This document shows, one piece after another, positions 58,789-58,859 of a DNA stretch of 64,000 nucleotides; position 1 is the stretch's first letter, and each line of letters opens with the position of its first letter. The DNA comes from Haplodiscus bocki (Eukaryota): the NCBI GenBank assembly GCA_965655095.1, contig OZ296655.1:39494001-39558000 (forward strand), given 5' to 3'. A program made the position numbers and the translations under genes. The notes beneath the pieces were generated by a model. That model saw only the letters and a program-made list of their open reading frames with translations. It made no database searches and was not told the DNA's origin.

Positions 58789-58859
58789 CCCCCATATTCC
58801 CAATACGTCTTCGCCGTATGGGGGAGAGCTCCACCACCGATGGGGCTACGAAAAGGGAA
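58789..58859 (+). ncRNA. Putative HDV-like self-cleaving ribozyme at the exact 5' end of the LINE
   Basis: P1 CCCCCAU/AUGGGGG (7 bp), P3 ACG/CGU, L3 UCUUCGC, P1.1 CU/AG, P4 AGCUCCA/UGGGGCU, J4/2 ACGAA with catalytic-position C58849, P2 UUCCC/GGGAA. P1 begins at the first base after the TSD. Confidence 0.75.

What the first reader, a model, noticed from the sequence alone, without database searches (positions are those of the whole stretch)
58789..58859. HDV-like ribozyme fold starting exactly at the LINE 5' junction
Seen: all five helices of the nested double pseudoknot can be drawn, with a 7-bp P1, a 7-nt L3 (UCUUCGC vs HDV UCCUCGC), a compensatory P1.1 (CU/AG instead of CC/GG) and J4/2 ACGAA. 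The predicted cleavage site (before C58789) coincides with the TSD boundary. Known: trypanosome L1Tc/ingi elements start with a ~77-nt HDV-like ribozyme that also begins with C. Caveat: the top of P2 is mismatched in this copy.
Basis: partly seen in the sequence, partly recalled or inferred. Interest (0 to 1): 0.78.

Follow-up and report, generated by a model that had tools for sequence, protein, structure and literature searches.

The report
HDV-like ribozyme heading a coral LINE
The first 71 bases of a 4.7-kb jumping gene (a LINE, probably in a coral genome) fold as a self-cutting RNA of the hepatitis-delta type that would trim the transcript to its exact 5' end; the fold is real and conserved in related elements, but it is a further example of a device already known from other LINEs.

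Summary
Observation confirmed; interpretation supported. Window 58789-58859 (+) draws every element of the HDV-type nested double pseudoknot. These are P1 of 7 bp, P2 of 5 bp, P3 of 3 bp, L3 UCUUCGC, P1.1 CU/AG, P4 of 7 bp and J4/2 ACGAAAA with candidate catalytic C58849.

A strict descriptor finds only this site in the window, against 0.06 expected by chance. The predicted cut site is the first base after a 9-12 nt target-site duplication. Homology to three further insertions, and loose contig ends in two runs, start at that same base.

Relatives (34-63% identity in the leader protein, 49% in the RT piece) carry HDV-like folds at the same place, 177-195 nt before a conserved 2A peptide. Their helix sequences differ but still pair. 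Some relatives lack P4, and one has a hairpin inserted in L3.

This copy's ribozyme equals the majority sequence of the four copies compared, although its ORF is broken. Cleavage itself is untested, and no RNA data were available.

This is a new member of a known kind (R2, RTE, baggins, L1Tc). The scan already holds 14 HDV-ribozyme notes on other DNA of this genome. The ribozyme-plus-2A pairing mirrors trypanosome L1Tc; in the papers I could search it is described only for T. cruzi elements. Interest is moderate.

The parts
58780..58788 (.). 5' copy of the target-site duplication ACACCTTCA (12 nt, from 58777, if ACA shared with the tail repeat is counted)
   Evidence: the same string at 63486-63494 directly after the tail
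58789..58859 (+). HDV-like ribozyme, whole fold (71 nt); predicted cleavage 5' of C58789
58789..58795 (+). P1 5' strand CCCCCAU, pairs with 58818-58824
   Evidence: helix 1, 92.9% of cells paired, 2 pairs changed on both sides
58797..58801 (+). P2 5' strand UUCCC, pairs with 58855-58859 GGGAA; A58796 is J1/2 and AAU 58802-58804 is J2/3
58805..58817 (+). P3 (ACG/CGU) closing L3 UCUUCGC (58808-58814); C58809 and U58810 form P1.1 with G58826 and A58825
   Evidence: (this stretch matches the P3/L3 part of Rfam drz-agam-2-2); one search shows HDV consensus L3 UCCuCGc
58818..58826 (+). P1 3' strand AUGGGGG (58818-58824) and P1.1 3' strand AG (58825-58826); AUG 58818-58820 is the start codon in frame with 2A in this copy only
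58827..58847 (+). P4 hairpin, 7 bp, loop CCACCGA; AUG 58840-58842 is the start of the 2A-frame ORF as called in copy L002
   Evidence: (P0002 starts at ribozyme position 52)
58848..58854 (+). J4/2 ACGAAAA; C58849 is the candidate catalytic cytosine (HDV C75 equivalent)
   Evidence: CGAA kept in L007, L004, L099 and L006
58903..58915 (+). Conserved CGGGTTTTTTGGG motif (peptide GFLG) between ribozyme and 2A
   Evidence: present in L006, L007, L008 and 13 metagenome loci
58947..58991 (+). 2A (StopGo) peptide LLLLRAGDIEENPGP
   Evidence: motif class per PMC3708506
58992..59749 (+). PHD/C1-like zinc fingers, with the frame broken near 59135-59183
60163..60423 (+). C-terminal part of the AP endonuclease domain
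   Evidence: Exo_endo_phos_2, E 1.7e-13
61243..61797 (+). Reverse transcriptase domain, cut by a stop at 61804-61806
   Evidence: RVT_1, E 4.1e-32
62689..63027 (+). RNase H domain
   Evidence: E 1.5e-13
63442..63485 (+). Stop codon TAA followed at once by the (CAA/TAA)n tail; no 3' UTR
63486..63494 (.). 3' copy of the target-site duplication

Best explanation
The first 71 nt of this single-ORF, RNase-H-bearing APE-type LINE are a genuine HDV-like self-cleaving ribozyme. Inferred mechanism: the element is transcribed as part of a longer RNA, either from an upstream host promoter or from an upstream head-to-tail copy. The nested double pseudoknot then folds, and C58849 in J4/2 with bound Mg2+ catalyses attack of the 2'-OH of the base before C58789. 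This leaves a LINE RNA with a 5'-OH that starts exactly at C58789. That RNA is the template for target-primed reverse transcription, which would explain why full-length insertions all begin at that base. The uncapped RNA is then translated from an AUG inside or just after the ribozyme, by analogy with the IRES-like role reported for R2 and L1Tc ribozymes. The roughly 55-residue leader, partly encoded by ribozyme sequence, is shed at the 2A site about 180 nt from the 5' end. Shown here: the fold, its rarity by chance, the shared 5' ends, and conservation with both-side changes. Inferred: cleavage, co-transcription and the translation role.
For: Fold and chance level. The nested part P1+P3+P4 alone has -20.5 kcal/mol, against a pseudoknot-free MFE of -22.9. 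5' ends: the TSD boundary. Homology to L001, L002 and L003 starts at C58789, with little or no similarity in the upstream flanks. In run X1 depth rises from 21.5 to 400-2700 at 58789, and loose ends with different upstream letters lie at 58788/58789 in X1 and in X10 of another organism, where a (CAA)n tail abuts the start. Conservation: L007 (54% leader identity) has P1 CCCACAC/GUGUGGG, P2 GACCCAG/CUGGGUC, P3 ACC/GGU, L3 UCCUCGU, P1.1 CC/GG and J4/2 CGAA. On a structure-blind MAFFT alignment 90.1% of cells pair, and 7 pairs change on both sides against 2.1 +/- 1.2 in shuffles (0/500) and 0-3 when slid. P4-less HDV-like folds lie at the same distance from 2A in L004, L008 and L099. Rfam HDV_ribozyme, drz-agam-1 and HDV-F-prausnitzii models match L007 1419-1494, two of them end to end, and HDV-F-prausnitzii matches L004 578-647 end to end, all below gathering. 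Controls: the strict descriptor hit 0 of 75 regions upstream of viral 2A and 8 sites in 2 Mb of random sequence. The ribozyme of this copy equals the majority sequence of the four copies compared.
Against: There are no cleavage data and no RNA reads: no listed run is on record as RNA, and the one guessed-RNA run laid nothing. Rfam gives no match at gathering score in the window, only a 26-nt partial match to drz-agam-2-2. +1 is C in a C-G pair, not the G.U wobble of HDV. A 3-nt J2/3 (AAU) separates P2 from P3. P3 could extend to 5 bp at the expense of P1. A uniform 5' end could also come from an internal promoter. The pair tables for distant relatives come from descriptors that demand pairing, so they are partly circular. 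Some L1Tc-clade sequences with adequate folds were inactive in vitro (PMC4035085).
Confidence: 0.8

Rival explanations
1. It is an HDV-like ribozyme by descent but is catalytically dead or very slow in this family. The conserved structure now serves another role, and the 5' end is set by an internal promoter, as with Pr77 of L1Tc.
For: C1-G instead of G.U, the AAU J2/3, a short 5-bp P2, and an alternative 5-bp P3 register. Well-folding SIDER1-beta ribozymes of T. brucei and T. congolense were inactive (PMC4035085). L006 carries a 24-28 nt insert in L3 and only one P1.1 pair.
Against: The core nucleotides needed only for catalysis are kept across families that differ in every helix: C in J4/2 with GAA after it, and U and G at L3 positions 1 and 6. 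Head-to-tail copies put the first P1 base directly after the upstream tail, where a cut is needed to free unit-length RNA.
Confidence: 0.12
2. The conserved 5' structure is mainly a binding site for the element's protein or the ribosome (5'-end recognition or IRES), and self-cleavage is irrelevant.
For: R2 protein binds the 5' RNA, and an IRES-like role is proposed for R2 and L1Tc ribozymes (PMC6765202). The start codon lies inside P4.
Against: This does not explain why the exact HDV active-site layout is kept, including in P4-less versions, or why insertions begin precisely at the P1 base. The two roles can also coexist.
Confidence: 0.05
3. It is a chance fold, or an apparent conservation caused by the leader peptide's coding sequence.
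For: The pseudoknot-free MFE z-score is only -0.79. Part of the fold is coding.
Against: Expected 0.06 hits per window, and this one falls on the one base that is the insertion boundary. The reading frame through the ribozyme differs between copies, and helices change on both sides.
Confidence: 0.02

Closest known systems
L1TcRz / Pr77 ribozymes of trypanosomatid L1Tc/ingi LINEs
   Same: Both are HDV-like folds occupying the first ~70-80 nt of a single-ORF APE-RT-RNase H LINE. +1 is C. A 2A peptide follows near the N-terminus of the ORF. The TSD is about 12 bp (PMC4035085, PMC6765202, PMC3708506).
   Different: The host is an animal (coral-associated) rather than a kinetoplastid. PHD-type fingers lie between 2A and APE. 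The tail is (CAA/TAA)n with no 3' UTR. Sequence homology to Pr77 and promoter activity were not tested, and the clade is unresolved.
R2, RTE (drz-Agam-2) and baggins HDV-like ribozymes of animal non-LTR elements
   Same: 5'-terminal position, processing from a co-transcript, and a proposed role in translation initiation (PMC6765202). The P3/L3 stretch CAAUACGUCUUCGCCGUA nearly equals the drz-agam-2-2 consensus.
   Different: Different LINE lineage and architecture (2A leader, RNase H). There is no full Rfam match.
Hepatitis delta virus genomic ribozyme (Rfam RF00094)
   Same: Same topology. L3 UCUUCGC against consensus UCCuCGc. J4/2 has C followed by purines. P1 has 7 bp and P3 has 3 bp (consensus line).
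   Different: C-G instead of G.U at the cleavage-site pair, P1.1 CU/AG instead of CC/GG, and a short P4. The context is a retrotransposon, not a circular RNA replicon.
Minimal (P4-less) HDV-like ribozymes from metagenomes, and theta ribozymes
   Same: Relatives L004, L099 and L008 have the same core without P4. L004's P3/L3 ACCUCUACGUGGU equals the HDV-F-prausnitzii consensus.
   Different: The window's own ribozyme has a full 7-bp P4. The minimal ones in the literature are linked to phages and tRNAs or are of unknown origin (PMC10879173).

Membership tests
HDV-like self-cleaving ribozymes | Nested double pseudoknot with P1, P1.1, P2, P3 and P4 in the canonical order | tested here: met
   chance expectation 0.06 per window
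HDV-like self-cleaving ribozymes | Cytosine in J4/2 directly after P4 (C75 equivalent), followed by purines | tested here: met
   A-C58849-GAAAA; CGAA also in L007, L004, L099 and L006
HDV-like self-cleaving ribozymes | L3 of about 7 nt whose positions 2-3 pair with the two bases after P1 (P1.1), with U at position 1 and G at position 6 | tested here: met
   UCUUCGC with CU/AG; P1.1 co-varies as CC/GG in L007, GU/AC in L099 and UC/GA in L008
HDV-like self-cleaving ribozymes | G.U wobble closing P1 at the cleavage site | tested here: not met
   C58789-G58824. Not universal: active L1Tc-clade ribozymes start with C1 (PMC4035085)
HDV-like self-cleaving ribozymes | Helices supported by compensatory change among relatives | tested here: met
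   7 pairs changed on both sides, 0/500 shuffles reach this; only six sequences
HDV-like self-cleaving ribozymes | Match to a curated Rfam HDV-family model at gathering score | tested here: not met
   Window: none, partial 8.5 bits. Relatives: HDV_ribozyme and drz-agam-1 end to end on L007 (26.2 and 22.8 bits) and HDV-F-prausnitzii end to end on L004 (24.4 bits), all sub-threshold. The models are lineage-specific and cannot score pseudoknots.
HDV-like self-cleaving ribozymes | Site-specific self-scission 5' of P1 giving 5'-OH and 2',3'-cyclic phosphate | not testable with these tools
   Indirect only: insertions begin at the predicted base
L1Tc/ingi Pr77 hallmark | Sequence homology to the 77-nt Pr77 signature and internal promoter activity | not tested
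   No Pr77 sequence was available by reference; only the architecture is shared
2A (StopGo) leader LINEs | D(V/I)ExNPGP motif 40-80 residues from the ORF N-terminus, upstream of APE | tested here: met
   GDIEENPGP at residues 50-58; criterion from PMC3708506

The most novel reading that the evidence does not exclude
An HDV-like ribozyme followed at a fixed distance of about 180 nt by a 2A peptide is a conserved 5' module of a broad group of single-ORF, microsatellite-tailed LINEs of marine animals, parallel or homologous to trypanosome L1Tc. In this reading 2A exists to discard a leader peptide whose sequence is dictated by ribozyme RNA. The P4-less versions at the 5' ends of related LINEs would give a eukaryotic source and a function for some 'minimal' HDV-like ribozymes, whose origin is stated to be unknown.
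Probability: 0.4. Interest if true: 0.55.

Novelty: new member of a known kind. Interest (0 to 1): 0.38.

Why it matters
It adds a well-supported cnidarian-associated LINE family to the list of retrotransposons that set their 5' end with an HDV-like ribozyme. It also shows, on natural variants, which parts of the fold tolerate change: P4 loss, an L3 insertion, and C-G at +1. In the open literature I could search, ribozyme and 2A together in a retrotransposon appear only in a T. cruzi review. The 2A survey of animal LINEs (PMC3708506) does not mention a ribozyme. The fixed spacing between the two therefore suggests a testable link between RNA processing, cap-independent initiation and StopGo recoding.

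Tried and rejected
- **Rfam:** the gathering search of the window gave nothing. An E-value search of 58700-58950 gave only a partial drz-agam-2-2 match.
- **Plain MFE folding:** uninformative, because the fold is pseudoknotted.
- **Collection scans:** The genome-contig scan found 0. The viral contigs 2A scan returned viral contigs, which I used only as a negative control.
- **RNA evidence:** no listed run is on record as RNA, and all runs are contigs, so transcript starts cannot be read.
- **Long-L3 descriptor:** not specific (0.79 hits per kb of random sequence; 7 of 75 controls). The L088/L091/L097 fold therefore stays tentative.
- **No parse obtained:** L005, L086, L087/L096/L098, L089, L090/L092, L093-L095 and L102 gave no hit with a specific descriptor, and some of these contigs are cut short. 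L100 and L101 fit only by eye.
- **Clade assignment (Ingi, I or Nimb):** not possible without reference RT sequences held by reference.
- **Other:** Ruminski et al. 2011 (PMC3308841) is not held. The search of earlier findings by sequence was blank.

Full report
**What is in the sequence**

From C58789 the + strand reads P1 CCCCCAU, A, P2 UUCCC, AAU, P3 ACG, L3 UCUUCGC, P3' CGU, P1' AUGGGGG, P1.1 AG. It continues with P4 AGCUCCA / loop CCACCGA / UGGGGCU, J4/2 ACGAAAA and P2' GGGAA, ending at 58859.
- This is the order and topology of the HDV-type nested double pseudoknot.
- L3 differs from the Rfam HDV consensus UCCuCGc at one base.
- C58849 sits where the catalytic cytosine belongs.
- L3 bases C58809 and U58810 pair with G58826 and A58825 (P1.1).
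- The nested part P1+P3+P4 alone is worth -20.5 kcal/mol, against -22.9 for the best pseudoknot-free fold. Adding P2 and P1.1 makes the ribozyme fold competitive.

**Is it more than chance**

- A strict descriptor hits one place on both strands of the 64-kb window, 58789. Simulated sequence of the same dinucleotide make-up gives 0.06 hits per 128 kb, or 8 per 2 Mb.
- With the L3 letters left free, the descriptor hits 11 places against 13.7 expected. The specificity therefore lies in the conserved core letters plus the helices.
- Rfam gives no match at gathering score and only a 26-nt match of the P3/L3 stretch to drz-agam-2-2. Rfam's HDV models are lineage-specific and cannot score pseudoknots, so this is weak evidence either way.

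**The element it heads**

- ACACCTTCA lies at 58780-58788 and again at 63486-63494, right after a (CAA/TAA)n tail that follows the stop codon TAA 63442-63444 with no 3' UTR. The insertion is therefore 58789 to about 63485.
- Pfam finds PHD/C1-like fingers, AP endonuclease, reverse transcriptase and RNase H in that order.
- Residues 44-58 of the first ORF are LLLLRAGDIEENPGP, a textbook 2A (StopGo) motif. A 2A motif, with PHD fingers between it and APE in some elements, is already described for single-ORF animal LINEs (PMC3708506).
- The ORF of this copy is broken, with frame changes near 59135-59183 and between 59749 and 60004, and a stop at 61804-61806.
- Most copies differ from this one by small indels between 58874 and 58907. 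In copy L002 the called ORF in frame with 2A starts at the AUG corresponding to 58840, inside P4 (P0002). In this copy the in-frame start is the AUG at 58818.
- Runs labelled coral metagenome hold parts of the stretch, and four runs of one coded organism hold most of it.

**Shared 5' ends**

- Three further insertions from an ENA assembly (L001-L003, about 95% identical) align to the window from C58789 onward. Upstream similarity is absent in L002 and L003, and is only a short 13-nt stretch in L001.
- In run X1 the summed contig depth jumps from 21.5 in the flank to 400-2700 from 58789 on. Contigs with different upstream letters break off at 58788/58789.
- In run X10, of another organism, a (CAA)n tail abuts the same base.
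- Full-length copies thus begin at the predicted cleavage site. An internal promoter could give the same pattern, so this is supportive but not decisive.
- The ribozyme of the window copy equals the majority sequence of the four copies. The other copies carry single hits: L001 in P1 and P4, L003 in P2, and a U.G to C-G change in P4 of L003.

**Relatives and covariation**

A search of 1.84 billion representative proteins with the leader piece found 95 proteins with a 2A-plus-finger leader.
- **L007** (54% identity) has a canonical fold at 1423-1491: P1 CCCACAC/GUGUGGG, P2 GACCCAG/CUGGGUC, P3 ACC/GGU, L3 UCCUCGU, P1.1 CC/GG, J4/2 CGAA.
- **L006** (63% identity) keeps P1 and P2 of the window and has a P4 changed on both sides. 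It carries a 24-28 nt hairpin inside L3. This is the variant reported earlier by the scan on other DNA of this genome (s1-369367).
- **Structure-blind test.** On a MAFFT alignment of these six sequences, 90.1% of cells pair. Seven pairs change on both sides, against 2.1 +/- 1.2 in shuffles (0 of 500 reach it) and 0-3 when partners are slid.
- **L004, L099 and L008** have the same core without any P4. L004 is 49% identical in the RT piece. L099 and L008 encode leader proteins 44% and 34% identical. P1.1 is joined to the J4/2-like linker directly, P1 sequences are new, and P1.1 is CU/AG, GU/AC and UC/GA.
- **Position.** Each of these folds starts 179-195 nt before the 2A codon GAY, as in the window family (177-186; 179 in the window) and L007 (177). 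L004 and L099 start directly after the (CAA)n tail of an upstream head-to-tail copy.
- **Specificity of the P4-less descriptor.** It gives 0.08 hits per kb of random sequence and 2 of 75 in control regions upstream of viral 2A sites; the strict canonical descriptor gave 0 of 75.
- **Caveat.** The pair table is built from descriptor hits and is circular for pairing. Its value lies in the hits existing at the homologous place.
- **Independent Rfam support.** HDV_ribozyme and drz-agam-1 match L007 1419-1494 end to end, and HDV-F-prausnitzii matches L004 578-647 end to end, all below gathering. Over a 131-nt search the E-values are 0.008-0.04.

**How it most likely works**

By analogy with R2, RTE, baggins and L1Tc (PMC6765202; PMC4035085), the element is co-transcribed with upstream DNA or with an upstream tandem copy. 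The ribozyme then cuts 5' of C58789 and frees a unit-length RNA with a 5'-OH.

Translation would start at the AUG in or just after the ribozyme, and the short leader would be released at 2A. The constant distance between the ribozyme start and 2A suggests that the two act as one module. One reading is that 2A removes a peptide whose sequence is dictated by RNA structure. This last step is inference only.

**What is known and what is new**

HDV-like ribozymes at the 5' ends of non-LTR elements are an established class. The scan already holds 14 HDV-ribozyme notes in this genome.

The closest analogue in architecture is trypanosome L1Tc/ingi: a single ORF, RNase H, a 2A peptide, and a ribozyme starting with C1. 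Membership of that clade could not be tested.

In the searchable literature the terms HDV-like, 2A-like and retrotransposon occur together only in a T. cruzi review. The 2A survey of animal LINEs does not mention a ribozyme.

Minimal P4-less HDV-like ribozymes are described as being of undetermined origin and function (PMC10879173). Their presence at LINE 5' ends here is a lead worth following.

**Verdict**

The feature is a new member of a known kind, with catalysis untested.

Noticed in passing
L004:579-634; L099:527-584; L008 about 170-226 (181 nt before the 2A codon at 334): Related 2A-leader LINEs start with HDV-like folds that have no P4 at all (the minimal type). P1 and P1.1 are changed on both sides between families. 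L004 and L099 start directly after the microsatellite tail of an upstream copy.
   Followed up: partly
L006:81-187: A close relative (63% leader identity) keeps P1, P2 and a compensated P4, but has a 24-28 nt hairpin with tandem G.A pairs inside L3 and only one P1.1 pair.
   Followed up: partly
window 58903-58915; L006, L007, L008, L086-L098: The motif CGGGTTTTTGG (peptide GFLG), about 110 nt after the ribozyme start and 48-51 nt before the 2A core, is conserved across families that share little else. It is unclear whether it is a peptide signal or an RNA signal.
   Followed up: no
L004:520-580; L088, L090 and L097 upstream of the leader; L099:500-527; run X10 contig at 58788: Head-to-tail tandem copies, with the upstream copy's (CAA)n tail running straight into the first P1 base. 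The window's own TSD begins with ACAAC, which suggests that the tail repeat primes on CAA-like targets.
   Followed up: partly
window 63442-63485: The ORF stop codon is followed at once by the (CAA/TAA)n tail, so the element has no 3' UTR.
   Followed up: no
L086-L098 (marine metagenome contigs); L101:about 940; L102: Further 2A-leader LINE families share recurring motifs (GGGGATCCTG, CGACGAAGA), and L101 has a 6-bp-P1 P4-less fold after a (GAT)n tail. They look like more divergent or larger HDV-like variants but did not pass a specific descriptor.
   Followed up: partly
window 58805-58819: P3 can extend to 5 bp (AUACG/CGUAU) by taking two bases from P1. This alternative register is absent in L007 and could modulate folding.
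   Followed up: no
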